Part shown: piece after piece, positions 1 through 62,638 of the stretch
Numbering within the stretch: position 1 is the first letter of the stretch
Layout: every line of letters begins with the position of its first letter
Assembly: GCF_020745735.1 (NCBI RefSeq)
Contig: NC_083401.1
Coordinates: 149,913,740-149,977,739, forward strand
Length of the DNA stretch: 64,000 nt
Source: Hemiscyllium ocellatum
Lineage: Eukaryota
Reading direction: 5' to 3'
Notes under the pieces: model-generated
What the model saw: only the letters and a program-made list of their open reading frames with translations
Database searches by the model: none
What the model was told of the DNA's origin: nothing
Made by a program: the position numbers and the translations under genes

Positions 1-885
1 GTGGCTTACATTTGCTGGTGGAGGAGGCCCAGGACTTGGTCGAGTGGGAAGGGGAGTTGAAGTGGTCAGCCACAGGGCGGTGGGGTTGGTTGGTACCAGT
101 GATATTCCCTGAAATGCTCTGCATGTTGGTGTTCTGTCTCCCCAGAGGAGACCACATTGAGAGCAACAGACACAGTAAATGAGGTGGGTGGATGTGCAGG
201 AAAATCTCTGCCGGATGTGAAAAGATCTTTTGGGACCTAGGACAGAGGTGAGGAGGGAGGTGCGGGCACAGATTTTATATCTCTTGTGGAGGCAAGGGAC
301 AGTGCCAGGTGTGGAGGCTGGGTTGGTGGGGAGCTAACAAATGAGTCACAGAGGGAATGGTGTCTGCAGAATGCAGGTAGGGGTGGGGAGGGAAATATAT
401 CTCATGTGGTGGGGTCTGACTGTAGGTGGGAGGGCTGGCAGAGGATAAGAAGGTCCTCATCTTCCACCCCACTAATCTCCAGAAACTAATCTCCTCCACT
501 TCCTGTCCCTCCACCTTTGAAACCCACCCCTCCAACAGCAACAAGGATAGGAACCCCCTGGTCCTCGCCTTCCATCCCACTAATTTCCGGATACAGCGCA
601 TTATCCTACTGTCCATTTTCCTTCCCATTTACCAGCTCCACCTTCCCCACCGACCTAATCACAATCACCCCCACCTGCATTCACCTATCGCTTTCCCAAC
701 AACTTTCCCTTGCCCCACCTTCCCATTTATCTCTCAGCCCCCTTCCCCCGTCTACATTCCTGATGATGGGCTTAATCCCAAAATGTCGATTCTCCTGCTC
801 CTCGGGTGCTGCCTGACCTGCTGTGTTTTTTTTTCAACGGCACACTTCAACTCTGACTCTCCATTATCTACAGTCCTCATTTAGA
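1..885. mobile_element. Rearranged Penelope-like element fragment: minus-strand ORF remnant, inversion near 450-480, plus-strand pLTR with decayed HHR at 756-791
   Basis: Similar to the Penelope remnant at 51020-52430; pLTR tail ctcagcccc...attcctgatgatgggc...gctgcctgacctgctgtg. Confidence 0.75.
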
Positions 886-2759
886 TGTCAACAAGAGTCA
901 GTCTCACTTTGCCTGTGGAAATCATGTGGTAGTCCAAATTGCATGGAGCACTGGTGAAGGGAAACTGGAGTGGGATTTATCACAGATCAGGGAGACTAGC
1001 CAAACCTTAGCTGCAGAGCCAAGGGTTCTGCCTGAGCTGCCAGCAGCTGATGAGCTACAACCTGGTGGAAACTGGTTAGCAGCAATAAAACAGTTCTGTT
1101 TGATGGGAGAAAATGCAAGTTTGTACACACAACCGGTCCACAGCAATAAATCTTTACTGATCATATTTCTCTGACATTTCCTGGGTCCCAGATCTCCATG
1201 TACCCTCAACACTTTGAAGATGAATATAATCTCATTATTTCTAAGACCACACATGTCAAACCAAGGAAGATAGAGGGCAGACTGTTGCATAAGAAGTAAT
1301 GGGATATCTTTGCTGTCCAGAATCATCCTGGAATAGCATTTGGTTTTGACTGTGGGTAAGGAAGCTTGTTAAAGGTTGATGCGGTCCAGCAACATCAGGT
1401 TGTCACCAGTCTGTGACCGTTAGACATGAGGAAGTGGAGGAATAACCACGAAGAGAGAGAGGAGATCTTTTACTGTGAATATGAGCATCGAAGACGCGGG
1501 AGTTATTCAGCAGATTGACAGAAGCAGAAAAAAAGGTAGGTGGCAGTTTGAAAATATGATAGCAAATGACTGGAGGGTGAAATTAGACTAGGGAATTGTA
1601 CAGGGGGATTGGGATTGGAAAGTGATCGGATCATTGAGATAGTGAAGAATGAGGAGGTGTTTGTGTTTGATTTTGTCCTTTAGTCAAGCCCATTTATCAT
1701 TGAAATAGGATCCTTGTGAGCTACAGCAACTGTCTTTAAAACTTTCTCATTCCCCACTATCCTGCTAATTTTGAAATGGTTACTTAACTGTTCAGGCATG
1801 GGATGCTGCACATGTTGGATGTCGGCTGCATTGCCTGCTCACCAGATGAGTGTACCTGCCTGGCAGAGTTTATCAGTGCAATCAGCGAACACATTGTCTT
1901 ACACAACACAACAGTCCATTTCAGAAAAAGGGCACAGGGTGAAATCACCACATCATTTACTTGCTTTAGTAGCTTTCAAGGCCTACTATTTTACTTTGAT
2001 CCCAGATTTGATGAGAAGGACATTGTGCGTTTCATTTGTAAAAAGCAGTGACACCATCTCTCATTTTAGTTTAGGTTTTAAGTCAACATTGAAAGTCAAT
2101 TTTTGTGAATGAATGAATTCTTTTGGTCTAAAGCGCCATGTACTTGCATCATCTGTATGCTTTTCCAATGACCAAAACTGCACTCTGTTCCCTTGCCTGA
2201 CTTGTTTAAAACATCAATGCAAGTAAAAATACATGGCTTGAAATTATAAATAAAAAAGCATGATCATCTTAATGGGAATGTACTATAGTCCCCTCAATAA
2301 TCAGGGAAATTGAGGAGCAAATACTAAGAGATCTCTCGAAGGGCTGAATTGCCTACTCCTGCACCTATTGCCTATTGTCTTATCTCAAGGATATGTCAGA
2401 ATAACAGGGTTGCAATAGTAAGAGATTTTAACTTTCCAAGCATTGACTAGGAATCCCATAGTTTTAAAGGTTTGAATGGTGAGATATTTGTTTAATGTGT
2501 TCAAGGAAATTTTCTTTATTAAAACTTAATGAAGAGAATGAGCACAAATTGACCTCTTGGGAAATAAGGAAGGGCGAGTGGCTGAAGTGTAAATAGGGGA
2601 ACACTTTGGGACTAATGCTTGTAATTCTATATGTTTTAAAACAGTTATGGAAAAGAATAAGCCTTCCATAAAAGCTAAAATTCTCGATTGGAGTAAGGCA
2701 CATTTTAATTGAATGAGACAGGAGCTTTCAAAGGTTGGTTGGAGTAGACTTATCGCAGG

Positions 2760-2887
2760 AGGAGAAAGTGAGGTCTGCAGATGCTGGAGATCAGAGCTGA
2801 AAATGTGTTGCTGGAAAAGCGCAGCAGGTCAGGCAGCATCCAAGGAACAGGAAATTCAACGTTTCGGGCATAAGCCCTTCATCAGGA
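2760..2887 (-). mobile_element. 128-bp Penelope pLTR-derived insertion (family A) with 14-bp TSD
   Basis: Direct repeat agacttatcgcagg at 2746-2759 and 2888-2901. Confidence 0.9.
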
Positions 2888-2888
2888 A
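2855..2888 (-). ncRNA. Minimal type-I hammerhead ribozyme motif, family A (intact core)
   Basis: Minus strand reads UUC CUGAUGA A GGGC UUAU GCCC GAAA CGUU GAA. Confidence 0.8.
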
Positions 2889-3033
2889 GACTTATCGCAG
2901 GCAAAGTCTGACAAATGGGAAGATTTCAAAAGCGTGATAATGAGAGTTCAGAGACATTGTGTTCCTGTTAGAGTGAAAGGTAAGGCTGGTAAGATTAATG
3001 AACAATAGATGAATAAAGATATTGAGGTTCTAG

Positions 3034-6000
3034 TCATAGAATCGTAGAGATACCAGTGCAGAAACAGATCCTTCGGTCCAACTTGTCCATGCCAACCAGA
3101 TATCCTAAATAAGTCTAGTCCTATTTTCCAGCATTTGACCCATACCTCTCTAAACACTTCTTATTCATGTAGCCATCCAGATGCCTTTTAAATGTTGTAA
3201 TTGTACCCACCTTCACCATTTCCTCTGGGAGCTCATTCCATACACACACCAATCTCTGTGTGAAAAAGTTGTCCCTTAGTTCCCTTTTAAACCTTTCCCC
3301 TCTCACCACAAATCTATACCATCTAGTTTTAGGCCTCCCTCACCCTAGGGAAAATACCTTCTTTATTTACCCTCTCCATGCCCCTCATGATTGTATAAAC
3401 CTCTAGAAGGTCACCCCTCAGCCTCCGATACAGCAGGGAGAACAGCCCCAGCCTATTCAACCTCTCCCTATCGCTCAAATCCTCCAGCCTTGGCAACATC
3501 CTTGTAAATCTTTTCTGAATCTTTTCCAAGTTTTACAACATCCTTCCTAGAGGAGAGGGTGCAGAATTGCATGCAGTATTTCAATAATGGCCCAACCAAT
3601 GTCCTGAACAGCTGCAAAATAATCTCTTAACTCCTATCCTCAAAGCTCTGACCAATAAAGGAAAGTATAGCAAATGCCTTCTTCACTATCCTATCTATCT
3701 GTGACTCAACTTTCAAAGAGTTATAAACCTGTACTCCAAGGTCTCTCTCTTCAGCAACATTACCCAGGACCTTACCATTAAGTCTATTAGTCCTGCCCTG
3801 ATTTGCCTTTTCAAAATGCAGCACCTCACATTTATCTAAATTAAACACCATCTGCCTCTCGTTGGCCCATCTGATGAAGATCCCATTGTACTCTGCTGTT
3901 ATCTTCTTAGTTGTCCACTACACCTCCAATTTTGATGTCATCTGCAAACTTACTAACTATACCATCTATGTTCACATCCAAATCATTTACATAAAGGATG
4001 AAAAGCAGTGCACCCAGCACCGATCCTTGTGGCACTCCACTGGTTACAGGCCTCCAGTCTGAAAACAACCCTCCACCATTACCCTCTGTCTCTTATCTTC
4101 AAGCCAGTTCAGCATTCAACTGACTAGTTCATTCCATGCAATGTAACCTTGCTAACCAGTCTACCATGAGGAACCTTTTCGACCGCCTTACTGAAGTCCA
4201 TATCGATCATGTCCAGTGCTCTGTCCTCATCAGTCCTCTATTACTTTTTCAAAAAACTCAATCAGGTTTGTGAGACATGACTCCTCCCCCCCCATGCACA
4301 AAGCCATGTTGACTATCCTAATCAGTCCTTGCCTTTCCAAATACATGTAAATCCTGTCCCTCAGGATTCCTTCCAACAACTTGCCCACCACTGATGTCAG
4401 GCTCACTGGTCTCTCATTCACTGGCTTTTCCTTACCATCTTTCTGAATTGAATTGAATTGAATTTATTGTCATATGTACAGAGGGACAGTGAAAAGCTTT
4501 GTTTTACGAGCAGTACAGGTAGATCACAGAGTTAAACAGCGTAGATAAGTAAATAATAGGTAAACAGCGGCAAAAACAAAAACACAGGTACAGGTGAATG
4601 CTAAGAGTTTGTGAATCCATTTCATATTCTATCAACAGTCGGGTACAAACTGTTTTGAAATTGGTGCATGTATTCAGGCTTCTGTACCTTCACGCCAATA
4701 TTAGAGGTTGTAGAAAAGCATTACCAGGGTGGGTTGGATCTTTTGAGAATGCTGGTGGCCTTTGCTTCCCAGCTGGCCTGATGGATTCTGTAAATGAGAG
4801 ATTGGTGTTTGTGATTGCCCGGGCCGAGTTCACCACTCTCTGTAACTATCTCTGATCTGGAATGGTACAGTTGCCATACCAGGTAGTGATATATGCAGAC
4901 AGAATCTCTCGACGGTGCACCCATAAAAGTTGGCAAGGGGATTCACCGTCATGCCAAATATCCTCAGCTGCCTGAGGAAGAAGAGATGTTGTTGGGCCTT
5001 TGTGACCAATGCGTCCACATGAAGAGTCCAAGAAAGCTTGTTGCTGATGTTCACTCCCAGGAGCTTGACACTCGCCACTCGTTCTGCCTCTGTGCTGTTA
5101 ATGTGTAGGGGGACATGAGTAACATCCCACCGAAAGTCAATTGAGTTCCTTGGTTTTGCAGCATTGAGAGTTAGATTGTTCTCAGTGCATCATTTTTTGG
5201 TCTTCCACCTCCCGTCTGTTTCGTTACCATCTGAGATTCGACCGACTGTGGTGGTGTTATCAACGAACTTGTAAATGGCATTAGTCTGGTATTTGGTGAT
5301 GCAGCTGCTCCTGAAGTGACAGGCTGACACCCAAGTGCCAACTGGAACAAGTTCTCATTGAGAATGTGTTAAAAGATTGCCCCCTCATTTCATTGTGGTT
5401 ACCACTATTCTTAATACTACATTAGCCAACCAGTCTTCTGATACCTCACCTGTGACTATAGTTGATACAAATATCACAGCAAGAGGCCCAGCAATCATTT
5501 CTCTAACTTCCCATAGAGTTCTACAGTACACCTGAACCAGTCCTGGGGATTTATCCACCTTTTTGTGTTTTAAGATGCCCAGCACCACCACCTCTGTAAT
5601 ATGGACACTTTTCAAGATGTTACTGTTTATCTCCCCACATTCTATATCTTCCATCTCCCTCTCCACAGTAAACACTGATGCAAAATACTCATTTAGTATC
5701 TCCCCCATCTCCTGTGATTCCAGACATAGGCTGATCTTTAAGGGACCCTATTCCCTCCCTAGTTACCATTCTGTCCTTAATATATTTTTGAAATTCCTTT
5801 GAATTCTTCTTAACACTATTTGCCAAAGCTATCTCATGTCCCCTTTTTGCCCTCCTGATTTTCTTCTAAAGTATACTCCTTCTGCCTTTATATTCTTCTA
5901 GGGAATCATATAATTTCTGCTGATAATACCTGACAAATGCTTACTTTTTATTCTTGACCAAAACCTCAATTTCTTTAGTCATCCAGTGGTTCCCTATGTC

Positions 6001-6352
6001 GACCAGCCTTGCCTTTCACCTTAACGTGAACATAATGTCTCTGGACTCCCATTATCTCATTTTTTTTTGAAGGCTTCCCATTTTCCAGCCATCCCTTTAC
6101 CTGTGACGATCCAGCCCCAATCAACTTTTGAAAGTTCTTGCCTGATTCTATCAAAATTCATTGTTTTCCAACTTAGAACTTCAACCTTTAGACCCGGTCT
6201 ATCCTTACCCATTGCTATTTTAATACTGATAGAATTATGGTCCCTGGCCCCAAAGTGCTCCCTCACTGACACCTCAGTCACTTGCCTTGCCTTATTCCCC
6301 AAGAGTAGGTCAAGTTTTGCACTTTCTCTAGTAGGTACATCCACATACTGAA
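3034..6352 (-). mobile_element. CR1/HER1 LINE ORF2 remnant interrupted by a Rex1/Babar insertion
   Basis: Frameshifted CR1 peptides MDVPTRESAKLDLLLGN, EILNEYFASVFT, RPVSLTSVVGKLLE, QKRFTRMLP, FFTQR..WNELP; 3' tail near 3035. Confidence 0.92.
4445..5398 (-). mobile_element. Rex1/Babar-type LINE 3' fragment nested in CR1
   Basis: KLLGVNISNKLSWTLHVDALVTKAQQHLFFLRQLR peptide; (TTCAA)n 3' tail at ~4445-4463; degenerate TSD ttaccatctttct / ttaccactattct. Confidence 0.8.
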
Positions 6353-7215
6353 TCAGAAAAAGTATTTTAAAAATGATATATTAAGTATAAACAACTGAGA
6401 CAAAATTAAACCCTGGAGTATCAAAGTGTAGAGGCATTTGTAAGAGGGAAGTCAGGAAGGCAAAGAGGGAATATGAGAGAGTCTTGACAGATAAGGTTAA
6501 GGACAATCCAAAGAGTTTCTGCAAGTATGCTAATGGCAAAAGAGTAACCAGTGATAGATCACTTTAAAGATCACTGAGGCCATCTTTGTGTTTAATCTCA
6601 GGAGATGGGAGAGATATTAAATGAATATTCTGGGTCAGTTTACTGTGGAGAAAGAAATGGAGGCTAGAGAACTCATGGAAGTATGTATTGATGTTTTGAA
6701 TACAGTTCACATTACAGAAGAGGAGGTGCTAAGAAAACAGCAAGGTGAATAAATATCTGGGAACGGATTAAGCTGCTGAGTAGACTGTTTGTTGTAATCA
6801 AGACCATTCAATAAATTGAGTTGAAGAAAAGTTAAGAAAAATAGCTAGAGAATGAATAAATGATTGGAAGGGTTTGGAGGGATATGGGCCGGATGCTGGC
6901 AGGTGGGACTAGATTGGGTTGGGATATCTGGTCGGCATGGATGGGTTGGACCAAAGGGTGTGTTTCCATGCTGTACATCTCTATGACTATCTCAGAACGT
7001 TATGGGAAGTTAGGGAGGAAATTGCGGAGCCCCTAGCGGAAGTATTTTTATCGTCTGTAACCACGGGTGAGATCCAGAGGACTAGAAGGTAGCTAATGTT
7101 GTGCCTTTGTTTCAGAAAGGTTTCAGGTCTGGAAATATAGACCGGTAGGATAGGATTTACACGCATTTGGAGACGCAGGGACTGATAAGTGAGAGTCAGC
7201 ATGGCTTTGTGCATC
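6353..7215 (+). mobile_element. Continuation of the old + strand CR1, with a further CR1 3'-end insertion at ~6850-6988
   Basis: gagatgggagagatattaaatgaata (EMGEILNE); CR1 3' UTR ggcatggatgggttggaccaaagg...ctgtacatctctatgac. Confidence 0.75.
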
Positions 7216-8195
7216 TATAAAATTACAAAAGCATGTTTGTCGGGGACAGGATAGCATGGTGTGTTAGCAGAACGTTGTCCTTTCACACTCCTAAATCTGG
7301 TTGTAGTTGTACCTCTGTGACAATGAAAGTCTGCTCTCTCTGAAATCTCCTCAGTGAAATGAGGGAGCAATCTTTTAACGTGTTCTCGATGAGAACTTGT
7401 TACAGTTGGCACTTGGCTGTCAGCCTGTCACTTCGGGAGGTATTGAAGAGAGCAGCTGCGATAGTACAGCAACAGATGGTTTTTTTGAAATTAGGTTTAA
7501 GTAGCAATGCAATCAAGGGCAAGTAGAGACCGAGTATAGGGCAGACCATCAGTGCTACATTCTCTCTGACCGTGTTTGAGTGAAAATGGTCAATCGTGCC
7601 GTTTTTCAAAGTGCTGATACTCATCAGTTTGTCATGCATAAATGCAAGTGTAGCATATTAACATATGTTAATTTTAAATTTGAATTTCATCAAAAAAATG
7701 TCTTCAGTTTCACAAATATTGCTTCAAATAATATTTTCGAATCTATCCAATTCGATATAACCAGGTGAGGATGAATCATGACAACCCTTTTTTTTTAAAC
7801 TTTCTCTTGCTTAGTCACAATTTTTCTCCCCAGTGTATAACTAATACACTTCAGTTTAATTAATTGACCAGATCAGAAATGAAGGAGAGTCCATTCCAAG
7901 GTTTTCTTGAGTGGGAGTGAAATTTTATTATCTGCTACCCTGAAAAAGTAATAAAACACAGCATTGAACTCACATAGATATGCAGGTAATGAGTTTACAA
8001 AGAAGGGGGGCGGTGGTGTTTGGTATGTGTGGGAAGGTGAGGTAGTTACAGTTAAAATTGTTTTAGCATCTTTAAGGTGTGAGATCAAAAGAGCTGAATC
8101 CGACTCTTTAGCTGTCCTTGGCAAATCATTCTTGGTGAATCATTGTTATTGTTCCAATTTGTTTTTTAGTGGCATTGTTTGATCTTGAGGGGGAT

Positions 8196-8201
<6 letters not shown>

Positions 8202-8240
<39 letters not shown>
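8202..8240 (+). repeat. (AG)n microsatellite
   Basis: Direct inspection. Confidence 0.95.
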
Positions 8241-8243
<3 letters not shown>

Positions 8244-9146: not shown

Positions 9147-9432
9147 GGGGCGGCGCAGTGGCTCAGTGGTTAGCACCGCTGCCTCACAGCACCAGCAGGT
9201 TTGAGCCCCACCTTGGGCGAATGTCTGTCTGTGTGGAGTTTGCACGTTTTCCTCGTGTCTGCGTGGGTTTCCTTCGGGTGCTCCAGTTTCCTCCCACAAT
9301 CCAAAGATGTGCGGGTTAGGTGAATTGGCCATGCTAAATTGCCTGTAGTGTTAGGTGCGCTAGTCAGGGGGAATGGGTCTGGGTGGGTTACTCTTCAGAG
9401 GGTCGAAGGGCCTGTTTCCATACTGTTGGGAA
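9147..9432 (+). mobile_element. HE1-type V-SINE (tRNA-derived)
   Basis: A/B-box head gtggctcagtggttagcacc; V-domain gtggagtttgcacg..gggtttcc..ggtgctcc.gtttcctcccaca; CR1-like tail. Confidence 0.9.
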
Positions 9433-9699
9433 TGGAATGGTCATAAGCATATGTGATTTGTTTTTTTTTTGTTTGGTTTCCAAAACCTCCATAACCAAGT
9501 TACTAATACCTCAGGAGCTGAGGTTCAGGTCTGCTCACAACCCTTTGCCACCAATAACAGTCTCTGTGAGGAGCCAAACAATCTGTTGACTGCACCTACT
9601 GTCCTTTCCTGATCGCAGCTTAGGCTGACATTATGAATGCGTGCAAAACAGCACTTTTCACTGTATTTCGATACATGTGACAGCAATCAACCAATGGGA

Positions 9700-9995: not shown

Positions 9996-10216
9996 AATCA
10001 TAAAATCCCTACAATCAACTGTCTCGACCAAACGTCCAGCATAATTTGCAGCAGTCCAGAGACACGGTGAGCAGAATAAATCCCTGGAGGTGATGCTGAA
10101 TATGGCACTACCTTTTATAAACTCCCCAATATTCAGTTTAAATAGTTCCTGAGGCGGCTGAACATCTGAATATTTGCAGAATTGCTTATTGTTTCCATCT
10201 GCTTTTTGCCTTACAG

Positions 10217-53542
<43,326 letters not shown>

Positions 53543-54750
53543 ACAGAAGGCTTTTGCTCCTTTTCAAACACATGCTTTAATGGGAAGTGGGTGGCATTGC
53601 AATCTCTTTTTTTAGACGTCAAATTAATTTCATGTGTTTAATATTATTTGAGTACAGTAGGAAGTGAAGACATTATGTGAGGTGAATAATCTGGTATCCC
53701 ACCTGCCTTTATCGAGCGACCTCTTCAGCTGCAATAAATGCTGCCATTTGGTGGAGATTCCATTTCGCTCATCTTATTCAAAAATTAATTTCCTTCCTCA
53801 TTAGACAGTTTTAGATAATGGTGGTCACTGTCAATGTGTCTTTGTATCCCTGTTATAATTTGTTTAGTGATCCCAAATAATGTGTCATGACTCAACATAT
53901 CAGGGCTTATTTGGAAGGGAAAGGAAGACTTGCATTCATCATGTAATTTTATAATTTAAGGGTGTAATGTGCTCACAAGTGTATGGAACTGAAAGTGTTC
54001 AAAGTGAAGGGTTACGTCTATCCAAGATTTCATTATGAGGTAAAAGGATAGGAGCACGTCATGTTGGCTGTGAATTGCAGAGTTGTTGTTGCTTAGTGTA
54101 TGAAGATGTTAATGTTCTGTAATGGTTTGAACATGACATATAAATGACCTTAATCAACCCAACAGAAATGGGGCTTTCCACAGCAAATTGTGAAACTTTC
54201 AGACTGAGCCCTTGGGAGACAAAACTATTTTACTCTTCTCAAGATTGTGAAAGTGCAGTTTAAACTATGTGTATGAACTTCACACTGTTGCCCAGTAATA
54301 AGAAATAATTAAGTGGTTGAACTTATCATTTTAGGGAATGTAAATGTATTAAATAGTGCGTAAAGAGTATGATGCAGTTTATGTGTTCTCTTAAAAATTC
54401 ATTTTGCAGTTAGCTAAAACTAAGGACAGTACCATATGATTGTAATGGGAATCTGACATGCTCTGTCTTTTTAACTGTCTAACAGTACAAAGTTCATGAT
54501 ATTAGTGTCTCATTTATTTTAGAAAGTGATTTCAGACCATCATACAGGATAATTCTCCATGCATTAAAACAATGTTGGGGTGTAATATTATGTCCTGTTT
54601 CTAAAGTTAAACATTACAGTGTTACCTCAGAAGTAGATAAGCAAAGCTGCTGCATATATTTATGTCCTTATATAAGTAAAAGTATACTAACCTGTCCAAG
54701 GTTTTGCTGTTTATTGTCTTAGTAATAAAGGTGAAATGTTGCCCAGTGGG
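53543..54750 (+). other. CPE: CPE 3' UTR (end approximate)
   Basis: AT-rich stretch with no recognisable repeats after the stop codon, ending at AATAAA plus a GT-rich element. Confidence 0.65.
53733..53738 (+). terminator. Possible proximal polyadenylation signal AATAAA
   Basis: Hexamer ~190 nt after the stop; weak downstream element. Confidence 0.3.
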
Positions 54751-54770
54751 TTGTTTTTTCTTGTTATTTC
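54724..54770 (+). terminator. Polyadenylation signal AATAAA (54724-54729) with downstream GU-rich element
   Basis: AATAAA followed ~20 nt later by gggttgttttttcttgttatttc. Confidence 0.7.
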
Positions 54771-54989
54771 TTCATGCTTGGTTATGCTTTCTGTACATAA
54801 ACTACATTGGGTATATCAGTATCATAATCAAAAATACAAAATACAGTAGAGTTCCTCCATTACAATTTAATTGTTAAAGTTACCTGTAACTGGAACACAT
54901 GCTGATTTGGAAAAGTTCCTTCTGATTAAAACTGTACAACTTCTCTTTTGTTCCTTTTGAACTTGAAGTATTTTTAAAAATCTCAATCT

Positions 54990-56010
54990 ACAAAATAGGA
55001 ACAGGAGTAGGCCTGCACTGTGATTCATTAGATCATAATGCAAGAAATTGGCATTGACGTTAATTGATTACAATGTCCTTTAATGTTATTAGTGTCCAGA
55101 AGCCTTTCTACAGTAGAGATTCCAAAGATTCAACACCTGCCATGTAAAGATATTTTTCCTTATCTTCATTTCTAGTGGCTTGCCCTTTTATCCAGAGACT
55201 CCTGATTCTAAAGTGACCAGCCTGAGGAAACATTTCATCTCCATCCACCCTGTCATGCTCAGTAAGGATTTGAAGTTTCAATAAGAACACCTCTCATTCT
55301 TCCAAACTCTGAAGAATGTAGACCCAGTTTTCTCAATCTCTTCTCATAAAACAGTCCTGTCAACACAGGGATGAGTTACCTCCTGTTTGGGATTTTAGTA
55401 AAAGCCTTCTGACATCCCAATCTACATCTACAGGTTCTCCTTTATCTATACTGTAAACGCCATCCTCCCAAAATTCCCAGTTCGTCAGCCATGATTTCCT
55501 TTCATAAACCCATGCTGGTTCTGCCAAAGTATCACCATTGTCTTCTAAATGTTGAGTTATTGTTTTCGTTATGGTAGATTCTAACATCTTATGCACTACT
55601 GATGTCATGCTATCAGGTCTGCAGTTCTCTATCCTCCCTCTTCCTACCTTATTTAAACAATGGAGTCACATTTGCCACTTTCCAGTCAATGGGAATCTTT
55701 CCAGAATCTATAGAATTATGAAAGGTAACCACCAAGGTATCCATTCTCTCTGAAGCTACTGCCTTCAAAACCTAGGGATGAGGCTTCTCTTTACCAAGAG
55801 ATTTATCAGTCTACAGTCCAGCTAATCTTTTCTCTAATGCTAATTTCTTTTATTTCCTGAGTTACACATGTCCCTTAGTTGCCTAATATTTCAGGGAGAT
55901 TTTCTGCTGTGAAGAGAGAGACGAAGTAACTGGTTTAGTTTCTATGGCATTTCCACATTAACTATATAAATGCACACCTGTAGTGGGTGGACATTTCTCC
56001 TTGCTAATCT
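54990..56010 (-). mobile_element. Old CR1 remnant
   Basis: MTSVVHKMLES...IDKGEPVDV peptide. Confidence 0.7.
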
Positions 56011-57002
56011 TTTCCCTTTCTATTCCTAGAAAGAATATTCTCTTTGTATGCGGCTTGATCTTATTCTAACCCAACATGATAAGAAATCAGCCTAAACACC
56101 AAGGTCACTTGGAGTAGTCCTGCCACCAGCTTAATGTTACTTGAGAATGAACCATTGCTACTCAGTGAGACATAAGGGAAACACCCCTTTTCACATTTAT
56201 TTGAGTTAGTTGTTTATTTACGTGACAATTAGTACTCGGTACTGCAACGTGGAGTACGCTATACTTACACTGAATGCTGACTGCATATTTTATGTTCTGA
56301 GATAGCATCAGTGATTCCAATTCATCACCTATCATTGTCATTATTTCAGGATGCATCTTTGTCAACTTTTTGCCCTCAAAATGCTTCAGTGAAATAATTG
56401 TTTTGGATTCTGTTGTTGTGTGAAGAGTGCACTCTAGAAGGGAGGTTTATTTAATGCCAATTGATGATGCCAGCGCTCCAATTGAAGGAACACTCAGAAA
56501 CCTAAGTTGCTGTGCCTGAATTAACATTGCATCTTCTGAAGAGAGTGACTGCATTTTTCTTTGATGTAGTTGTTTAAATCTCAGCTTCCATTACCTCAGC
56601 GGTATTCTGTCCATGAAGTGAGGTGCAATTTTGCAGCTTTGATGTCACCATTTCAAACAGAAGTCAATCTAAAACTAAACTCTGAATCTTCCGTTTCATT
56701 ATTGCTTAATATTAGATCAGGAGAACTTCATTTTGTGTTCTCTTTTATTGATTTCCTTTTAAATGTTAGCAAATGCATAAGTTTGCTGTAGCCAAATTCT
56801 GCAATGACTGGAACACAAAAACTCCCAAACCACGTCCCCCAACCTAACTCTCTCACAAACTCATTGTGCCAATGATACATTTGATGAGAAAACTGTCTAT
56901 AGGTAATGAACACACGTAATTCCCTACTATTAGCTAATGTTTCTGTCTGCTGCTATGACTCTGAATATGGCCCATTTTCGTTGAGGCTGTACAGGGAGGA
57001 TA

Positions 57003-57325
57003 ATTAGATTAGATTAGATTAGATTACTTACAGTGTGGAAACAGGCCCTTCGGCCCAACAAGTCCACACAGACCCGCCGAAGCGCAACCCACCCATACCC
57101 CTACATTTACCCCTTACCTAACACTACGGGCAATTTAGCATGGCCAATTCACCTGACCCGCACATCTTTGGACTGTGGGAGGAAACCGGAGCACACGGAG
57201 GAAACCCACGCAGACACGGGGAGAACGTGCAAACTCCACACAGTCAATCGCCTGAGTCGGGAATTGAACCCGGGTCTCTGGCGCTGTGAGGCAGCAGTGC
57301 TAACCGCTGTGCCACCGTGCCCCCC
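57003..57325 (-). mobile_element. Young V-SINE
   Basis: Full length, CpG-rich. Confidence 0.93.
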
Positions 57326-58594
57326 ATAATGGTTGGCTACCTACTAGCTGGCAGCAGTTAGCCAATGGGGTGATTAAATTCCCAGTTATGGACACTTGTC
57401 AGAAGTTGGCTGAATTTTCAAGATAGCAGAAACCCCACTGATGAATTGAGGCAGCCTCCGATGGCAGACTATGGACAGTGTCTCTATATTTCACACTCCT
57501 GTTGCTATTATTGCCAGCCTGCCATCATCTTCGGGGATTCTCCTTCCACAGTGACCATCCATCTGTTATGACCCCATCTTACTTTTAATGATTGTAAAAT
57601 TCTTCAAAGGTTACCACTATATTAGCACACCTTTTGCTTTCTCCTGCCCACAGCAGCTCCTACCTCTGACGTTGGGGCGACTGATTTCTCAATAATTGGC
57701 CTACTTGCCTTAATTAGATCAAGGAGCCAGTAGTTGTGGGTTCACAAACAGTGGGATTTGGACCTGGGAACGCAAACTCTGCCTTTAACGTTAAGGTGGA
57801 GAGTAAGTACTGATGGCAATACTGCTCTTTCAAAGTTCTATCAATGTTGTGGATTTAAATTCTCAATGCAGAATGACATTTTGTGCAGCTGTGACAAAGC
57901 TTGGAAGCACAATGAACCGGGAGAAGACGCAGAAATTAAAAAAGCCAAAAATAAAGTTGTGTGGGTTGAACGATGGCAGCTAGATTCTGTTCAGACAATT
58001 GTAAAAGAAATGCACAGTAGACTAAGTGGATTTCCTCGATGGTATTAAATTACCTAAAGCTAAAGTTGAGGGAGATCTGAGATGGAATCATCTCAATCTG
58101 CCAGAACATTTGGAAGAACATATGGGGAAAGTAACTATCCAGGGGGCACATTATGACAGGTTACAATGCTGCTATTATGTTCTCAGAATCCTTCAGATGG
58201 GTTTGGTTTTCCTGAACTTCAAAGTGGGAACTGTCTTGTTTTTATTACCATGTCATGAATGTTCATTAACACCCCGGCTACTAGAATTGTGTCCATGGCC
58301 TAATTCCATTAAAAGGAAACACATCCATTCACAAACACAGCCATACGTATGAGGTGTATGCCTGGCAAGATGGACTTCCTTCAAGCTCTGGTAAGGACAA
58401 ATTTCATTTACTTAGCTCCTTCATATCTACAGGCATTTCTTTATGCAAGCACTTACACTATTTGGGTGGGGGTGGGGGGCATGATGGTTGGTGAGATCAT
58501 GTTGATTAGTTTGTAAGCAGTCTCAATCATCTGCAGTCTGGCTTGTTAAACATTTATTGTGTGAGGGGTGAACCCTGACATAACCAACAAACCT

Positions 58595-58819
58595 AGGTAA
58601 AAACGAGGACTGCAGATGCTGGAAATCCAAGTCTGAATTAGAGTGGTGCTGGAAAAGCACAGCAGGTTAGGCAGCACCCAACGAGCAGAAAAATCAACGT
58701 TTCAGGCAAAAGCCCTTCATCAGGATGATTCCTGATGAAGACCTTTTGCCCAAAACATTGATTTTTCTGCTTTTTGGGTGCTGCCTGACCTGCTGTGCTT
58801 TTCCAGCACCATTCTAAAT
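58595..58819. mobile_element. Fold-back family A pLTR element; core-intact HHR on minus strand at 58693-58726, decayed mirror at 58728-58763
   Basis: TSD cataaccaacaaacct / cataaccaacaagcct at 58579-58594 and 58820-58835. Confidence 0.88.
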
Positions 58820-59260
58820 CATAACCAACAAGCCTGCCTCATGAGGCAGGCCCACTGGCTAATGCTGACTGAGGTACGAAAGTGGGATGGAATTCAAAAC
58901 AATTCCGTTCAAATGCCATCTTTTATAGTTGTGTCCTTGCCCCCACTCAAGCTTTTGGCGAGAATCTCTCAGATGTATGATGGGAGGTCAGTGACCTTAA
59001 GTGTGAAGTGCTGAGTGTTGCAGCTCCTTTTATGTTTCAAACGTGAACCCTGGCAGATGTGAGAGAGGCAACACAACTGTGGCACTGGTAGGGTTAACAT
59101 TGGTGGCTGGAGGAAGTGGCAGACAGTCGTTGAAGATGAGACATTAGGGGGAGAAGACTGACTCCCAATGTCCTGTTTGAAAGTCCTCAGCATTGCCAAC
59201 ATTAGAATGCAAATTCACACACGCAGAGGCAGGAAAAGTTGAATAGACAGTGCTGCATAT

Positions 59261-59886
59261 TGTCATGGACCAAACCCCCTCAAAATATAGTAAGACGGTC
59301 TGGACCCTAACTTTTTCTTATTTTAGAGTTAAGTTTAAGGTGTTGCATTCCAGATGCAATTCAATTGGTCAAACTAATGACGTTAAGCAAAATTCACTTT
59401 ATTGTTACACTGCAGTTAAAATACAGACAAAATAAAAAGAAAAGAATCGGCTTAACTGTAACTCTATCGAAATGCTTAAAACAAGATCTATTAACTACGA
59501 CTAATTAATTAATTCCAAAATAGTAATGGCCCATAAAAACACCCTTGGCTAAAGCAAATTCAGTTACACAGATTGTCTCACATACAATCTGAGCAGCAGG
59601 AAGGGAACCCTAGCTTTTAGCTGTAACAGAGGGAGGAATAACAGCTTCCACATCAAGCTTCAAGGCCCCAACAACTGCAGAAAACTAAAACTAAAATTCC
59701 GGGTTCTGTGGGAGCTTAACCCCAACTCGTTCAGGCTGCTTCTATTGTTCCGACCTTAAAAAAAAGGCCTCACAAACTGTTACTCCATTGGCTTCTAGCA
59801 GACTGCTTGGTACCTGTCTCAAACTTCATTCATTAAAAAATACCAGGACAAAGTACACCTCTTAAAGCTATAGAATCATCATGATA
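59261..59886 (-). mobile_element. Probable solo LTR
   Basis: Termini tgtcatg...catgata (decayed TG..CA inverted ends), ~625 bp, AATAAA on minus strand near 59400; no clear TSD. Confidence 0.45.
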
Positions 59887-60059
59887 CTGAATGCAGCAGG
59901 TCATTCATCCTCTTGCAATACTGGAGCCGTGATCTTTGAGCCATCATTGACCTATTGCTGTCCAAGTTGTCTTCATCTATTGGGATTGTGCTTGTCATAT
60001 GTAGGGAGAAGAACTGAACCCTTCTACCCCCGGCAGGCTTCAGGAGAATGTCTAGGGAT

Positions 60060-60477
60060 TCAAAGTTTGGGAGAAGATTTGTAGCTCGGGTGCTCGTTGT
60101 TGTTGTTCTGATCGCGAGCTGGGAATTTGTGTTGCAGACGTTACGTCCCCTGTCTGGGTGACATCCTCAGTGCATGGGAGCCTCCTGTGAAGCGCTTCTG
60201 TGATGTTTCCTCTGGCATTTATAGTGATTTGTACCTGCCGTTTCCACTCATCCACAGATTTAATCAATAAGCACATCGACCTGGACCCAATATACTGACC
60301 ACTGCAGCGGACAGCTGGAACTGACAACCGGAAGCGGCAGAGAAAAACCACTATAAATGCCGGAGGAAACATCACAGAAGCGCTTCACAGGAGGCTCCCA
60401 AGCACTGAAGATGTCACCTAGACAGGGGACAAAACGTCTGCAACGCAAATTCCCAGCTCGGTGAACAGAACCACAGC
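60060..60477. mobile_element. Fold-back family C Penelope element retaining the ORF C-terminus; both HHRs mutated (60134-60173 minus, 60402-60441 plus)
   Basis: TSD aatgtctagggat / aatgtttagggat at 60047-60059 and 60478-60490; HSSTDLINKHIDLDPIY encoded at 60245-60295. Confidence 0.85.
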
Positions 60478-60564
60478 AATGTTTAGGGATGTTGCTAAAA
60501 TGTGATCCATTATTTTCATCTGGTCTGTGACAACTCCGGAACGGATGAGCACAGGTTGAGTAAT

Positions 60565-61180
60565 GATTAGATTAGATTACCGACAGTGTGGAAACAGGCC
60601 CTTCGGCCCAATAAGTCCACACTGACCTTCCGAAGAATAACCCACCCAGACCCATTTCCCTCTGCCTAATGCATCTAACACCATGGGCAATTTACCATGG
60701 CCAATTCACCTGACCTACACCGTGGGCGGCACGGTGGCACAGTGGTTAGCACTGCTGCCTCACAGCGCCTGAGACCCGGGTTCAATTCCCGACTCAGGCG
60801 ACTGACTGTGTGGAGTTTGCACGTTCTCCCCGTGTCTGCGTGGGTTTCTTCCGGGTGCTCCGGTTTCCTCCCACTGTCCAAAGATGTGCGGGTCAGGTGA
60901 ATTGGCCATGCTAAATTGCCCGTAGTGTTTGGTAAGGGGTAAATGTAGGGGTATGGGTGGGTTGCGCTTCGGCGGGTCGGTGTGGACTTGTTGGGCCGAA
61001 GGGCCTGTTTCCACACTGTAAGTCTAATCTAATCTAATCTTTGGACCGTGGGAGGAAACCCACGCAGACAGGAGAGAATGTGCAAACTCTACGCAGACAG
61101 TCGCCCAAGGTGAGAATCGAACCTGGGACCCTGGTGCTGTTAGGCAGCAGTGCGAACTACTGAGCCACTGTGCTGCCCCC
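60565..61180. mobile_element. Older minus-strand V-SINE with a young plus-strand V-SINE (60724-61038) nested inside
   Basis: The two halves 60565-60720 and ~61039-61180 are collinear. Confidence 0.9.
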
Positions 61181-61229
61181 TGGGTTGCAGACAATGAAGG
61201 GGTGTGTGAGTGCCTTTTAAGATGGGTGC

Positions 61230-61547
61230 CATCCTGATGAAGGGCGTTTGCCTGAAACGTTGATTTTTCTGCTCCTTGGGTGCTGCCTAACCTGCTGTGC
61301 TTTTCCAGCACCACTCTAATTCAGACTTGGATTTCCAGCATCTGCAGTCCTCGTTTTTACCTAGGTTTGTTGGTTATGTCAGGGTTCACCCCTCACACAA
61401 TAAATGTTTAACAAGCCAGACTGCAGATGATTGAGACTGCTTACAAACTAATCAACATGATTTCACCAACCATCATGCCCCCCACCCCCACCCAAATAGT
61501 GTAAGTGCTTGCATAAAGAAATGCCTGTAGATATGAAGGAGTTAAGT
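61230..61547 (+). repeat. 318-bp inverted duplication of 58410-58727 (HHR at 61231-61264, pLTR and flanking host DNA)
   Basis: Same length; about 4 substitutions counted by eye. Confidence 0.93.
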
Positions 61548-62401
61548 CCAGGATGTCCAGGTGGACTTCAGAACTTACTGTCCAGACAATTTGCCGTTTT
61601 ACCTGCATGAACAGAAGCACTGAGCTGTGAAAAACATTATCTTGTGAGATAGTCTGATTGACTCCCATGTGTAAATCACTCCTACCATTTGGTTTACCTC
61701 AAAAAAAATCTTCTACCCTGAAGCCTTGGTAGACCCAGCTAAAAATGTCCAATAAATGCAGAGCAGCAAACAGCAAAACCAATAAAAATAATAAAGTACA
61801 ATGCAAAATGTTCAATTGGCCAAGAGGTAATGATGTTGCTCAGTGGGGGCAACACTTCCAAGAGATTAGCCTATTTGAAAATCTGGATGTCATTTGCAAT
61901 TTTGGCCATAGTTGCTGATTACCATAATATGGAGATACTGAAACAGAATATCTGCAGGTTTCCCCCAAGGTGATTAGATGGATGTTTATGGACTTTTGGT
62001 AGCTCTGACTGAGGCTTGCATGGCACAATGGCAGTGTCTCTATCTCTGGGCTACAAGACCTAGGTTTAAATGCCATCTTCTCCAAATGTCTGAACAGATT
62101 GATTAAAAATATCAAAGAGCTTTGGCTGACTTATGTTGGCCTGTTATAGCATGACTTAGGAACCAAGGAAAACCATACACAGGTTGTCAGATGTTACACT
62201 GGAAGCCTTGGAGGAGGATGTCCAGGATGTAAAGCCCTGAACCTGCAGGGGTGAGTGGTTATACCTCCCACCTCCTCAGTCTCCAGGTGCTCCCCTGCAG
62301 CAGCTAGTGCTATTTTGCCTCGTCTAACATCCTCTTACCTTTCCTCATTTCCAAACCCAACCAAGCTACATCCCGAGCAGGATGGAGATGATTCCATTCC
62401 T

Positions 62402-62638
62402 AGGCGAAAGTGAGGACTGCAGATGCTGGAGATCAGAGTTTGGATTAGAGTGGTGCTGGAAAAGCACAATAGGTCTGGTAGAATCTGAGGAGCAGGAAGA
62501 TCGATGTTTCGGGAAAAAGCCCTTCATCAGGAATGAAGGGCCCTCTGATGAAGGGCTTTTGCCAGAAACGTTGATTTTCCTGCTCCTCGGATGCTGCCTG
62601 ACCTGCTGTGTTTTTCCAGCACCACTCTAATCTAGACC
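62402..62638. mobile_element. Fold-back family A pLTR element
   Basis: TSD atgattccattcct / atgattccactcct at 62388-62401 and 62639-62652; arms turn between two back-to-back HHR motifs near 62535. Confidence 0.88.

What the first reader, a model, noticed from the sequence alone, without database searches (positions are those of the whole stretch)
756..62580. Dispersed system of minimal type-I hammerhead ribozymes in four families, carried by short mobile Penelope-derived units
Seen: about 20 motifs fit helixI-CUGANGA-N-helixII-GAAA-NNUH-helixI'. Family A: AUUC CUGAUGA A GGGC-UUAU-GCUC GAAA CGUC/GAAU (15888, 42087, 41784-; close variants at 2855-, 58693-, 61231). Family B: CAC CUGAUGA A GGAGC-AUC-GCUCC GAAA GCUA/GUG (43453-, 25155-). 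Family C: GCA CUGAUGA U GUCUCCU-AGCC-AGGGGAC GAAA CGUU/UGC (12672, 12523-). Family D, decayed: GYU CUGANGA A GGGUC...GAAA..UU/AAC (18699-, 52308). Helices I and II have unrelated sequences between families yet always pair, and helix III is reduced to a self-complementary tetramer (ACGU or AGCU). This covariation argues against chance. Established: Penelope-like elements carry minimal type-I HHRs in their pLTRs, and these cleave efficiently mainly as dimers via the palindromic helix III. Inference: the genome carries a very large load of non-coding, ribozyme-bearing mobile units (SINE- or retrozyme-like) mobilised by Penelope RT/GIY-YIG, many inside a neuroendocrine gene. I do not know whether these shark families have been described.
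Basis: partly seen in the sequence, partly recalled or inferred. Interest (0 to 1): 0.88.

Follow-up and report, generated by a model that had tools for sequence, protein, structure and literature searches.

The report
Penelope retrotransposon stubs carrying hammerhead motifs
The window holds about 22 short, dead insertions of Penelope-like retrotransposons, each built around a minimal hammerhead ribozyme motif; the motifs are real and were kept intact in the parent elements, but this is a kind of element already described, and the copies here are decaying remnants near a carboxypeptidase exon.

Summary
All 12 listed sites exist. A strict minimal type-I hammerhead descriptor finds 10 intact motifs against 0.01 expected by chance. 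About 24 repeat arms carry the motif region.

The motifs show the four traits published for Penelope-like-element (PLE) minimal hammerheads. These are an extra base after A9, a G10.1-C11.1 pair, a palindromic loop-less helix III, and helices that covary between families.

The carriers have the published PLE insertion scars:
- exact 12-14 bp target-site duplications;
- fixed 3' ends at two positions 36-38 nt apart (the "tail");
- inverted 5'-truncated partner arms;
- exactly one tail per insertion in 11 of 11 pairs.

Across copies, the non-CpG catalytic core is almost invariant (1/150 changes against 140/872 downstream). The two CpGs inside the motif decay.

- family D is a diverged branch of A, so there are three families;
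- no PLE gene, tandem array or same-family direct dimer lies in the window;
- nothing shows that these copies are independent SINE- or retrozyme-like elements, or that they cleave.

The scan has flagged the same thing hundreds of times in this genome. It is a new member of a known kind, of low to moderate interest. One detail is worth following: the 5' ends pile up at the first base of the ribozyme.

The parts
15888..15923 (+). Intact minimal hammerhead, subfamily A1. Helix I AUUC/GAAU, extra A after A9, helix II GGGC/GCUC, helix III ACGU, predicted cut after GUC at 15919.
15635..15982 (.). Family A inverted-pair insertion. The left arm is a 45-nt 3' stub with tail. The right arm is about 186 nt of upstream (pLTR-like) sequence, the hammerhead, and a tail-less end. 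Exact 14-bp target-site duplication (TSD) at 15621-15634 and 15983-15996.
41689..42181 (.). Family A1 inverted-pair insertion. Intact hammerheads at 41784-41819(-) and 42087-42122(+), both arms reaching about 135 nt upstream. Left arm has the tail, right arm does not. 14-bp TSD at 41675-41688 and 42182-42195.
2760..2887 (-). Solo family A insertion, 128 nt, with tail. Hammerhead at 2855-2888; the outermost helix I pair uses a TSD base. 14-bp TSD at 2746-2759 and 2888-2901.
58591..58819 (.). Family A inverted pair joined at the first base of the hammerhead. Left arm (-) intact with tail (hammerhead 58693-58726). Right arm (+) decayed and tail-less. 12-bp TSD at 58579-58590 and 58820-58831.
61231..61366 (+). 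Family A unit with an intact hammerhead (61231-61264). It is part of a 318-bp inverted duplicate (61230-61547) of 58410-58727, so it is not an independent insertion.
62397..62638 (.). Family A inverted pair joined within about 10 nt of the hammerhead start. Left arm has the tail, right arm does not. Both hammerheads decayed. 9-bp TSD.
47134..47283 (.). Family A insertion: a full unit (-) with tail and G12>A, plus a 19-nt inverted tail-less stub. 14-bp TSD at 47120-47133 and 47284-47297.
49234..49379 (.). Family A inverted pair. Left arm is tail-less and starts inside the ribozyme (profile position 14). Right arm is a short stub with tail.
23689..24394 (.). Family A arms 23827(-) with tail and 24289(+), the latter with pLTR-like upstream sequence. 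Possibly one complex insertion. No TSD found. Both hammerheads decayed.
756..893 (+). Old family A copy with upstream sequence and tail. The hammerhead is inactivated (G12>A, CpG>TpG).
20716..20837 (-). Family A copy with tail, 5'-truncated inside CUGAUGA.
12486..12786 (.). Family C inverted pair with 96.7% identical arms and intact hammerheads at 12523-12562(-) and 12672-12711(+). Helix II is 7 bp, with an extra U after A9. Both arms end 55 nt upstream of the ribozyme. The tail is on the right arm only. 12-bp TSD at 12474-12485 and 12787-12798.
60060..60479 (.). Older family C inverted pair with both hammerheads decayed. The tail is on the left arm only. 11-bp TSD with one mismatch.
25064..25330 (.). 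Family B inverted pair. The hammerhead at 25155-25189(-) passes the descriptor with only 3 helix II pairs. Helix III is AGCU, with the predicted cut after CUA. The tail is on the left arm only. 12-bp TSD at 25052-25063 and 25331-25342.
43367..43563 (.). Family B inverted pair joined at the hammerhead start. Intact hammerhead at 43453-43487(-) with a 5-bp helix II. The right arm has lost GAAA and the cut site. The tail is on the left arm only.
63690..63881 (.). Diverged A/D inverted pair. Both arms are truncated at profile position 23, so the ribozyme is incomplete. 13-bp TSD at 63677-63689 and 63882-63894.
18653..18730 (-). Family D (diverged A) copy. The CUGAUGA and GAAA boxes are present. 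Helix II has wobble pairs, helix III is lost through CpG decay, and there is no helix I.
48769..48884 (-). Family D copy starting at C3. Helix II is GGGUC/GACUC (5 bp), which gives U-A where family A has C-G at 10.4/11.4.
52310..52422 (+). Family D copy, decayed (weak helix II, no helix I).
30960..31060 (+). A/D fragment that starts inside the ribozyme (profile position 26).
48367..48460 (-). A/D fragment starting near the predicted cleavage site (profile position 32; the cut would give 34). The alignment end is imprecise.
10174..10521 (+). ORF holding a coding exon of the host gene, an M14 zinc carboxypeptidase of the N/E type.

Best explanation
These are heavily 5'-truncated ('stub') insertions of Penelope-like retrotransposons (PLEs) from three families: A with its old branch D, B, and C.

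Each stub is the 3'-terminal module of the element's template RNA. It consists of a minimal type-I hammerhead followed by about 45-95 nt that end at one of two fixed positions 36-38 nt apart.

Shown here:
- The motif has every sequence trait published for PLE minimal hammerheads.
- The insertions have exact 12-14 bp target-site duplications.
- Most insertions are head-to-head pairs made in a single event.
- In every pair, exactly one arm carries the tail.
- The catalytic core was conserved during the diversification of the source elements, while inserted copies decay, fastest at the two CpGs inside the motif.

Inferred from published biochemistry of one purified PLE (PMC11167929):
- The element's GIY-YIG endonuclease cuts both DNA strands with a 12-14 bp stagger.
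- Its reverse transcriptase primes on each strand at one of two internal start sites just downstream of the hammerhead.
- The two cDNAs are joined at their truncated ends.

Also inferred: the hammerhead works in the parent element's multimeric transcript, as a dimer through the palindromic helix III and probably with help from the element's protein. The dispersed copies in this window are by-products. I expect them to have no ribozyme activity of their own, because none sits in a same-family direct tandem.
For: 1. Motif. There are 10 strict hits against 0.01 expected. All 10 have one extra base after A9. Eight of 10 have G10.1-C11.1 and the other two have G-U. All have a palindromic 15.2/16.2 and H17 = C, U or A. 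These are the traits listed in PMC4209133.

2. Covariation between families.
- Helix I: AUUC/GAAU, CAC/GUG, GCA/UGC.
- Helix II: GGGC/GCCC, GGAGC/GCUCC, GUCUCCU/AGGGGAC.
- Helix III: ACGU versus AGCU.
- Within the A/D superfamily, position 10.4/11.4 is C-G in A and U-A in D.

3. Core conservation. Non-CpG core positions show 1 change in 150 cells, against 140 in 872 for the 60 nt downstream (Fisher p = 2e-9). None of 10,000 random column sets is as conserved. Copies were collected with a whole-unit profile, not by the motif.

4. Insertion scars. There are exact TSDs of 12-14 bp at 8 loci and shorter ones at 2 more. The 3' ends fall at 95 or 128-131 nt (A), 89 or 126 (B), and 77 or 115 (C) from the ribozyme start. 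Eleven of 11 inverted pairs have exactly one tail; chance is about 5e-4 if the arms were independent.

5. Match to published descriptions. These scars match PMC8557442 (inverted 5'-truncated copy; 30-40 bp tail often at only one end). They also match PMC11167929 (both strands cut and extended; two internal RT start sites downstream of the hammerhead).

6. Wider occurrence. Contigs of a run that also covers the unique flanks (X5, presumably DNA) contain at least 49 head-to-head joints within 3 nt of the hammerhead start. Related contigs occur in runs of a second organism.
Against: - No PLE reverse transcriptase or GIY-YIG gene is in the window, so the parent elements were not seen. Assignment to PLEs rests on insertion anatomy and on the motif.
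- Rfam gives no hammerhead hit.
- Self-cleavage was not tested and could not be. The sequencing runs were available only as assembled contigs, which show no molecule ends.
- Helix I of the majority family A sequence is weak (2 bp, a U-U mismatch, then 1 bp). In some copies one helix I pair comes from flanking or junction bases.
- The purified Anolis element showed no difference in start-site use between the two strands in vitro, whereas here every pair has one tail. The two-start-site reading of the tail is therefore not fully settled.
Confidence: 0.85

Rival explanations
1. The units are independent, non-coding, non-autonomous elements (SINE- or retrozyme-like). A short RNA that starts at the hammerhead would be transcribed on its own and copied in trans by PLE proteins.
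For: - The 5' ends pile up at the first 10 nt of the hammerhead in 13 of 25 arms.
- Many contigs in four RNA-library runs diverge into unrelated sequence exactly at 15888/15889.
- At least 49 contigs of run X5 join two arms within 3 nt of the hammerhead start.
- Three of 4 family C arms share one 5' end 55 nt upstream.
- The 318-bp inverted copy at 61230-61547 begins exactly at the hammerhead start and runs on into flank, as a read-through transcript from that start would.
- A preprint proposes that animal retrozymes derive from PLE terminal sequences and found them in one chondrichthyan (10.64898/2026.07.22.740005).
Against: - There is no tandem array in the window, no tRNA-like head and no tRNA, 5S or 7SL similarity.
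- Several arms continue 20-190 nt upstream into shared pLTR-like sequence, and contigs show a conserved continuation further upstream. Longer parents therefore exist.
- The pile-up could instead reflect where reverse transcription stops or where the two cDNAs are joined.
- No promoter or transcript start was demonstrated.
Confidence: 0.2
2. The hammerheads have been taken over by the host. Sense-strand intact copies (12672+, 15888+, 42087+, 61231+) would cut the carboxypeptidase pre-mRNA and tune its expression.
For: Four intact motifs lie on the same strand as the carboxypeptidase exon. Intronic hammerheads are known in other vertebrates (PMC6155905).
Against: - Each inverted pair contributes one arm to each strand, so the orientation is not selected.
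- Copies decay at CpGs at the rate expected for unselected DNA.
- A loop-less helix III needs a partner, and the two same-family sense copies are 26 kb apart.
- Whether the sites lie inside the transcript at all was not tested.
Confidence: 0.03
3. The inverted pairs are foldback or MITE-type DNA transposons whose terminal inverted repeats happen to contain the motif.
For: The pairs have inverted arms flanked by target-site duplications.
Against: - The outer ends are asymmetric in all 11 pairs (one tail).
- The inner ends vary from pair to pair, while the outer ends are fixed.
- Solo single-arm insertions carry the same 14-bp TSD (2760-2887).
- This is the signature of 3'-anchored reverse transcription, not of cut-and-paste.
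Confidence: 0.02
4. The motifs are chance matches to a short descriptor.
For: Rfam finds no hammerhead. The descriptor specifies only about 20 positions.
Against: - 0.01 hits are expected and 10 are found.
- Three families with unrelated helix sequences carry the motif at the same place in the unit.
- The features not required by my descriptor are still present: the extra base in all 10, and G10.1 in all 10.
- The core is conserved at p = 2e-9.
Confidence: 0.01

Closest known systems
Minimal hammerhead ribozymes (min-HHRs) of metazoan Penelope-like elements (Cervera & de la Pena 2014, PMC4209133; dimer cleavage by Lunse et al. 2017 as cited in PMC6765202)
   Same: Type-I order of the catalytic boxes, no helix III hairpin, palindromic 15.2/16.2, an extra unpaired base after A9, G10.1-C11.1, and a short helix I. 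Helix II is 4-7 bp. There are several consensus families per genome with covariation. Most copies are single motifs in truncated elements. Pairs on opposite strands 100-700 bp apart were already noted.
   Different: Cartilaginous fishes are not mentioned in that paper. The three family sequences here are specific to this genome and a relative. Activity is untested.
Poseidon-type PLE of Anolis carolinensis (PAc), the one biochemically characterised PLE (Frangieh et al. 2024, PMC11167929)
   Same: The hammerhead lies just upstream of the reverse-transcription start sites. There are two start sites roughly 30-40 nt apart, which explains the optional tail. Both DNA strands are cut and extended. 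Here the 3' ends lie about 77-95 and 115-131 nt from the ribozyme start. By my arithmetic from the published numbers, this is close to PAc's geometry.
   Different: - In PAc the ORF starts at helix II. Here, reading from the AUG inside CUGAUGA of the family A consensus meets a stop after 17 codons.
- PAc showed no strand bias in start-site use in vitro, whereas here each insertion has exactly one tail.
- The TSDs here are not conspicuously AT-rich.
General PLE insertion architecture (Craig et al. 2021, PMC8557442, fig. 2; Goubert et al. 2022, PMC8969392)
   Same: Strong 5' truncation, an inverted 5'-truncated copy next to the main copy, and a 30-40 bp tail often at only one end.
   Different: There are no full-length copies, pLTR-ORF-pLTR structures or direct partial tandems in this window.
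Non-LTR retrozymes of animals (Cervera & de la Pena 2020, PMC7229834; Li, Clavereau & Pollet 2026 preprint, 10.64898/2026.07.22.740005)
   Same: Non-coding DNA with type-I hammerheads, related to PLE terminal sequences. They have been reported in one chondrichthyan genome.
   Different: Retrozymes are direct tandem repeats that give circular RNAs. Here there are only solo or head-to-head copies and no tandem array.

Membership tests
PLE minimal type-I hammerhead (min-HHR) | CUGANGA and GAAA boxes in type-I order, with a helix II hairpin between them | tested here: met
   10 strict hits; 24 arms with a recognisable region
PLE minimal type-I hammerhead (min-HHR) | One unpaired nucleotide between A9 and G10.1 | tested here: met
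   Present in all 10 intact motifs: A in families A and B, U in family C
PLE minimal type-I hammerhead (min-HHR) | G10.1-C11.1 closing pair of helix II | tested here: met
   8 of 10 have G-C; 58726(-) and its duplicate 61231(+) have G-U
PLE minimal type-I hammerhead (min-HHR) | No loop 3, with palindromic 15.1-16.1 (ACGU or AGCU) so that helix III can form only between two copies | tested here: met
   CG or GC at 15.2/16.2 in all 10. RNAcofold forms the intermolecular AACGUU helix for the 2888 and 58726 variants. This is only a consistency check.
PLE minimal type-I hammerhead (min-HHR) | Consensus families with compensatory changes in the helices | tested here: met
   Every pair of helices I and III, and 10.2-10.4 of helix II, shows two-sided changes between families A, B and C (10.1-11.1 stays G-C or G-U). 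C-G versus U-A at 10.4/11.4 between A and D.
PLE minimal type-I hammerhead (min-HHR) | Site-specific self-cleavage after H17 | not testable with these tools
   The runs were available only as contigs, and no molecule ends were reported
Penelope-like element insertion | Target-site duplication flanking the whole insertion | tested here: met
   Exact 12-14 bp at 8 loci; 9 bp and 11 bp (one mismatch) at 2 more
Penelope-like element insertion | Fixed 3' end with variable 5' truncation | tested here: met
   3' ends fall at two fixed positions per family, while 5' ends range from profile position 44 to 186 nt upstream
Penelope-like element insertion | Optional 30-40 bp tail, often at only one end | tested here: met
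   The tail is 36-38 nt in families A, B and C. Exactly one per insertion in 11 of 11 pairs.
Penelope-like element insertion | Inverted 5'-truncated copy adjacent to the main copy | tested here: met
   11 head-to-head pairs, each inside one TSD where a TSD was found
Penelope-like element insertion | ORF with telomerase-like RT and GIY-YIG endonuclease sharing the terminal sequence | tested here: inconclusive
   None among 20 of the 21 ORFs of at least 110 aa; the only RT remnant is FADD-type, which I read as LINE-type. Truncated copies need not carry the ORF. The genome could not be searched.
Non-LTR retrozyme | Direct tandem repeats, each with a type-I hammerhead | tested here: not met
   Tandem Repeats Finder finds no such array. 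All close pairs are inverted.
Non-LTR retrozyme | Circular RNA of unit length | not testable with these tools
   Only contigs, not reads, were served
SINE (pol III-transcribed) | tRNA-, 5S- or 7SL-derived head with an internal promoter | tested here: not met
   ARAGORN finds 0 tRNA-like genes. Rfam at E<=10 gives no tRNA, 5S or 7SL match.

The most novel reading that the evidence does not exclude
Two regularities stand out. The 5' ends of the stubs pile up at the first nucleotides of the hammerhead, and every head-to-head insertion carries exactly one tail.

Together these could mean that the real template is a short RNA that begins at the ribozyme. A dimeric PLE ribonucleoprotein would copy two such RNAs in one coordinated event, one per DNA strand, each from a different start site.

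That would make the hammerhead-led module a true SINE-like parasite of PLEs. It would also give a genomic read-out of a step of PLE integration that has so far been seen only in vitro.
Probability: 0.2. Interest if true: 0.55.

Novelty: new member of a known kind. Interest (0 to 1): 0.25.

Why it matters
It adds cartilaginous-fish families to the catalogue of Penelope-like-element hammerheads. It also shows that a single 64-kb window already holds the full published set of integration scars in unusually clean form.

About 7.5% of the window (my sum of the insertion lengths) consists of these stubs, roughly one insertion per 3 kb. A genome like this would therefore supply very many natural integration events. 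That would let one test how PLEs choose reverse-transcription start sites, how they join the two cDNAs, and why synthesis so often ends at the ribozyme's 5' edge.

For genome annotation, the practical message is that these palindromic stubs should be masked as PLE fragments. They produce sub-threshold microRNA-like hairpin matches and should not be read as regulatory ribozymes of the host gene.

Tried and rejected
- Rfam 15 at gathering scores and at E<=10 gave no hammerhead family. It gave only sub-threshold miRNA-type hits caused by the palindromic pairs, plus a weak U6 hit.
- A MAFFT alignment of the motifs from all families (alignment A1) misplaced family B's GAAA and family A's helix II 3' strand. 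I therefore did not use it for the count of structure pairs or for a covariance model. Pairs were tabulated with a script instead.
- The sequencing runs came only as assembled contigs, so read starts at the predicted cleavage sites and back-joined (circular) reads could not be assessed. The many 'loose ends' at 15921 and 42120 reflect subfamily divergence, not cleavage. Depth in those tables is not a measure of expression. High-copy DNA contamination of the RNA libraries cannot be excluded. The RNA-library-to-X5 depth ratio does differ about tenfold between the unit and the central pLTR-like piece.
- I looked for copies that begin exactly at the cleavage site (profile position 34), which would indicate cleavage in vivo. 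Only one imprecise candidate was found (48367-48460, start near 32).
- No PLE protein sequence was available from any tool to search the window by translation. Only ORFs of at least 110 aa were scanned, and one of the 21 was not scanned.
- PDB sequence searches with the RT-region ORFs gave nothing useful.
- The paper of Lunse et al. is not held in the library, so it is cited through PMC6765202.
- A words search of earlier findings for the tail and TSD anatomy returned nothing.

Full report
**What is there**

I scanned both strands with a strict minimal type-I hammerhead descriptor. It required:
- helix I of at least 3 bp;
- CUGANGA, followed by at most one extra base;
- helix II of at least 3 bp, then GAAA;
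- a paired 15.2/16.2, U16.1, and H17 not G;
- the matching helix I 3' strand.

This scan gives 10 hits, against a mean of 0.01 in 100 second-order Markov shuffles. The hits are not independent. They represent seven insertion events plus one local duplicate, in three families.

Rfam 15 reports no hammerhead family, either at gathering scores or at E<=10. I think this is because the motif lacks a helix III hairpin, but I did not test that. With decayed copies counted, 24 arms contain the ribozyme region.

**The motif matches the published PLE type**

Cervera and de la Pena (PMC4209133) list four traits that emerged for minimal hammerheads of Penelope-like elements (PLEs) and that were not imposed by their search:
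- consensus families with covariation;
- a conserved G10.1-C11.1 pair;
- palindromic 15.2/16.2.

All four are present here.
- Every intact motif has the extra base: A in families A and B, U in family C.
- Eight of ten have G10.1-C11.1, and the other two have G-U.
- Helix III is ACGU in A and C, and AGCU in B.

The helices differ on both sides between families:

| Helix | Family A | Family B | Family C |
|---|---|---|---|
| I | AUUC/GAAU | CAC/GUG | GCA/UGC |
| II | GGGC/GCCC | GGAGC/GCUCC | GUCUCCU/AGGGGAC |

Family D is not separate. A profile of the family A unit finds the D copies at E 1e-6 to 1e-10. Between A and D, position 10.4/11.4 changes from C-G to U-A.

I collected A/D arms with a profile of the whole ~135-nt unit, not by the motif. 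I then compared substitutions against the column majority.
- Non-CpG core positions (C3, U4, G5, A6, G8, A9, A13, A14, A15.1, U16.1) show 1 change in 150 cells.
- The 60 nt downstream show 140 changes in 872 cells (Fisher p = 2e-9).
- None of 10,000 random sets of downstream columns is as conserved as the core.

Other parts of the motif are less conserved:

| Region | Fraction changed |
|---|---|
| Helix stems | 13-15% |
| Loop 2 | 25% |
| H17 (switching between the permitted C and U) | 41% |

Changes private to one copy are rare (3%) and are not significantly depleted in the core (p = 0.16). The picture is selection on the ribozyme in the source lineages and neutral decay after insertion.

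G12 and the 15.2/16.2 pair each sit in a CpG. About 23% of cells at these sites have changed to TG or CA. That is how most old copies lost the motif.

**What carries the motif**

Homology between copies begins at or near the first base of the ribozyme and runs about 95 or about 130 nt downstream.

Most copies are head-to-head pairs. Each pair lies inside a single exact target-site duplication (TSD):
- 14 bp at 15.6 kb, 41.7 kb and 47.2 kb;
- 13 bp at 63.8 kb;
- 12 bp at 58.7 kb, 25.2 kb and 12.6 kb;
- shorter ones at 62.5 kb and 60.2 kb.

A solo copy at 2760-2887 has a 14-bp duplication.

The outer ends are fixed and the inner ends vary. Measured from the ribozyme start, the arms end at these positions:

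| Family | Tail-less end (nt) | Tailed end (nt) | Extension (nt) |
|---|---|---|---|
| A | 95 | 128-131 | about 36 |
| B | 89 | 126 | 37 |
| C | 77 | 115 | 38 |

In all 11 pairs, one arm has the extension and the other does not. If the arms were independent, the chance of this would be about 5e-4.

This is the published anatomy of PLE insertions:
- Craig et al. (PMC8557442) describe strong 5' truncation, an inverted 5'-truncated copy beside the main copy, and a 30-40 bp 'tail' often present at only one end.
- Frangieh et al. (PMC11167929) worked with a purified Anolis element. Both DNA strands are cut and extended, reverse transcription starts at two internal sites just downstream of the hammerhead, and the tail is the sequence between those sites.

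The asymmetric ends and the solo copies argue against a foldback DNA transposon.

**What is not there**

- No PLE gene. Twenty of the 21 ORFs of at least 110 aa were scanned against Pfam. The only reverse-transcriptase remnant (28456-28785, minus strand) has a FADD motif, which I read as LINE-type rather than PLE-type.
- No tandem array.
- No tRNA-like head.
- No tRNA, 5S or 7SL match.
- No two intact motifs of one family in direct orientation closer than 26 kb.

A loop-less helix III needs a partner. Published activity is low even in dimers (PMC4209133, PMC6765202) or needs the element's protein (PMC11167929). I therefore expect the copies in this window to be inert.

**Evidence from sequencing runs**

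Runs holding this DNA were served only as assembled contigs.

In four RNA-library runs from two organisms, only the repeat is covered and the unique flanks have zero depth. A run that also covers the unique flanks (X5, presumably DNA) covers everything. Nothing can be said about cleavage or circles from these data.

The contigs do show that the family is very abundant and is shared with a related organism. They also show that many other copies diverge into unrelated sequence exactly at the ribozyme's first base (loose ends at 15888/15889). At least 49 contigs of run X5 join two arms within 3 nt of that base.

**One detail I cannot explain**

In the window, 13 of 25 arms begin within the first 10 nt of the ribozyme. 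The contigs show the same preference genome-wide. Cleavage cannot produce this end, because the cut lies 33 nt further downstream.

Possible causes are a transcript start at the ribozyme, a stop of reverse transcription there, or a preferred joining point for the two cDNAs. I give that about 0.2.

**Comparison with what is known, and verdict**

- PLE minimal hammerheads are described across metazoans, including fishes, coelacanth, amphibians and reptiles (PMC4209133).
- PLEs are listed in the elephant-shark and whale-shark repeat surveys (PMC4350176, PMC8455134).
- A 2026 preprint reports hammerhead retrozymes in its one chondrichthyan species, which also fell among the classes where PLEs were found (10.64898/2026.07.22.740005).
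- I found no paper that describes these particular families.
- The scan's own index holds 463 notes on hammerheads with Penelope in this genome. Two earlier follow-ups on other windows also reached 'known kind'.

This is a new member of a known kind. The claims of separate SINE- or retrozyme-like elements and of efficient cleavage are not supported.

The only host-gene evidence in the window is an ORF at 10174-10521(+) that holds an exon of an M14 N/E-type carboxypeptidase. I did not test that name, nor whether the insertions are intronic.

Noticed in passing
window 58410-58727 and 61230-61547: A 318-bp inverted duplicate (314/318 identical). It comprises one family A arm, its TSD and about 170 bp of flank. 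It begins exactly at the junction of the 58.7-kb inverted pair, which is the first base of the hammerhead. I saw no TSD around the 61.2-kb copy. It could be a read-through retrocopy or a break at the palindrome centre.
   Followed up: partly
window 15983-16073 (+), and 15621-15634: A decayed U6 snRNA pseudogene (Rfam U6, 25.8 bits, E 0.03, full model length). By my recollection of the U6 sequence, the 15.6-kb PLE pair inserted near its 5' end, so the 14-bp TSD would consist of the first U6 bases.
   Followed up: partly
A, B and D arms throughout the window (for example 2887, 47261, 58726/58728, 62534/62545, 43487/43491): The 5' ends of the stubs cluster within the first 10 nt of the ribozyme (13 of 25 arms). 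Three of 4 family C arms share a 5' end 55 nt upstream, at a TATAAA-containing sequence. The cause is unknown.
   Followed up: partly
window 12568-12666 and 41855-42050: The palindromic PLE pairs give long near-perfect hairpins that hit plant and animal microRNA models below threshold in Rfam. If transcribed, they would form long double-stranded RNA.
   Followed up: no
window 60731-61040, and copies at 57006-57318, 36311-36633, 49511-49817, 35479-35783, 14980-15285, 50330-50608, 30505-30773, 9158-9405: Another abundant repeat of about 310 bp (73-96% identity), often with an adjacent inverted ~130-bp piece. It is unrelated to the hammerhead units and was not identified.
   Followed up: no
window 28456-28785 (-): A reverse-transcriptase remnant with a FADD motif, which I read as LINE-type (Pfam RVT_1, 27.7 bits, just under the cut-off). 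It lies in a stretch with strong negative GC skew (28-32 kb).
   Followed up: partly
window 10174-10521 (+): An ORF holding a coding exon of a zinc carboxypeptidase of the M14 N/E type. The best solved relatives are carboxypeptidases N, D and M.
   Followed up: partly
families A, B and D, about 57-70 nt from the ribozyme start: A shared ACCTG(C/G)TG block sits at a similar distance downstream of the hammerhead in otherwise unalignable families A and B. 15 of the 20 window occurrences of ACCTGCTG lie in the A/D/B units. It may be part of the signal for starting reverse transcription.
   Followed up: no
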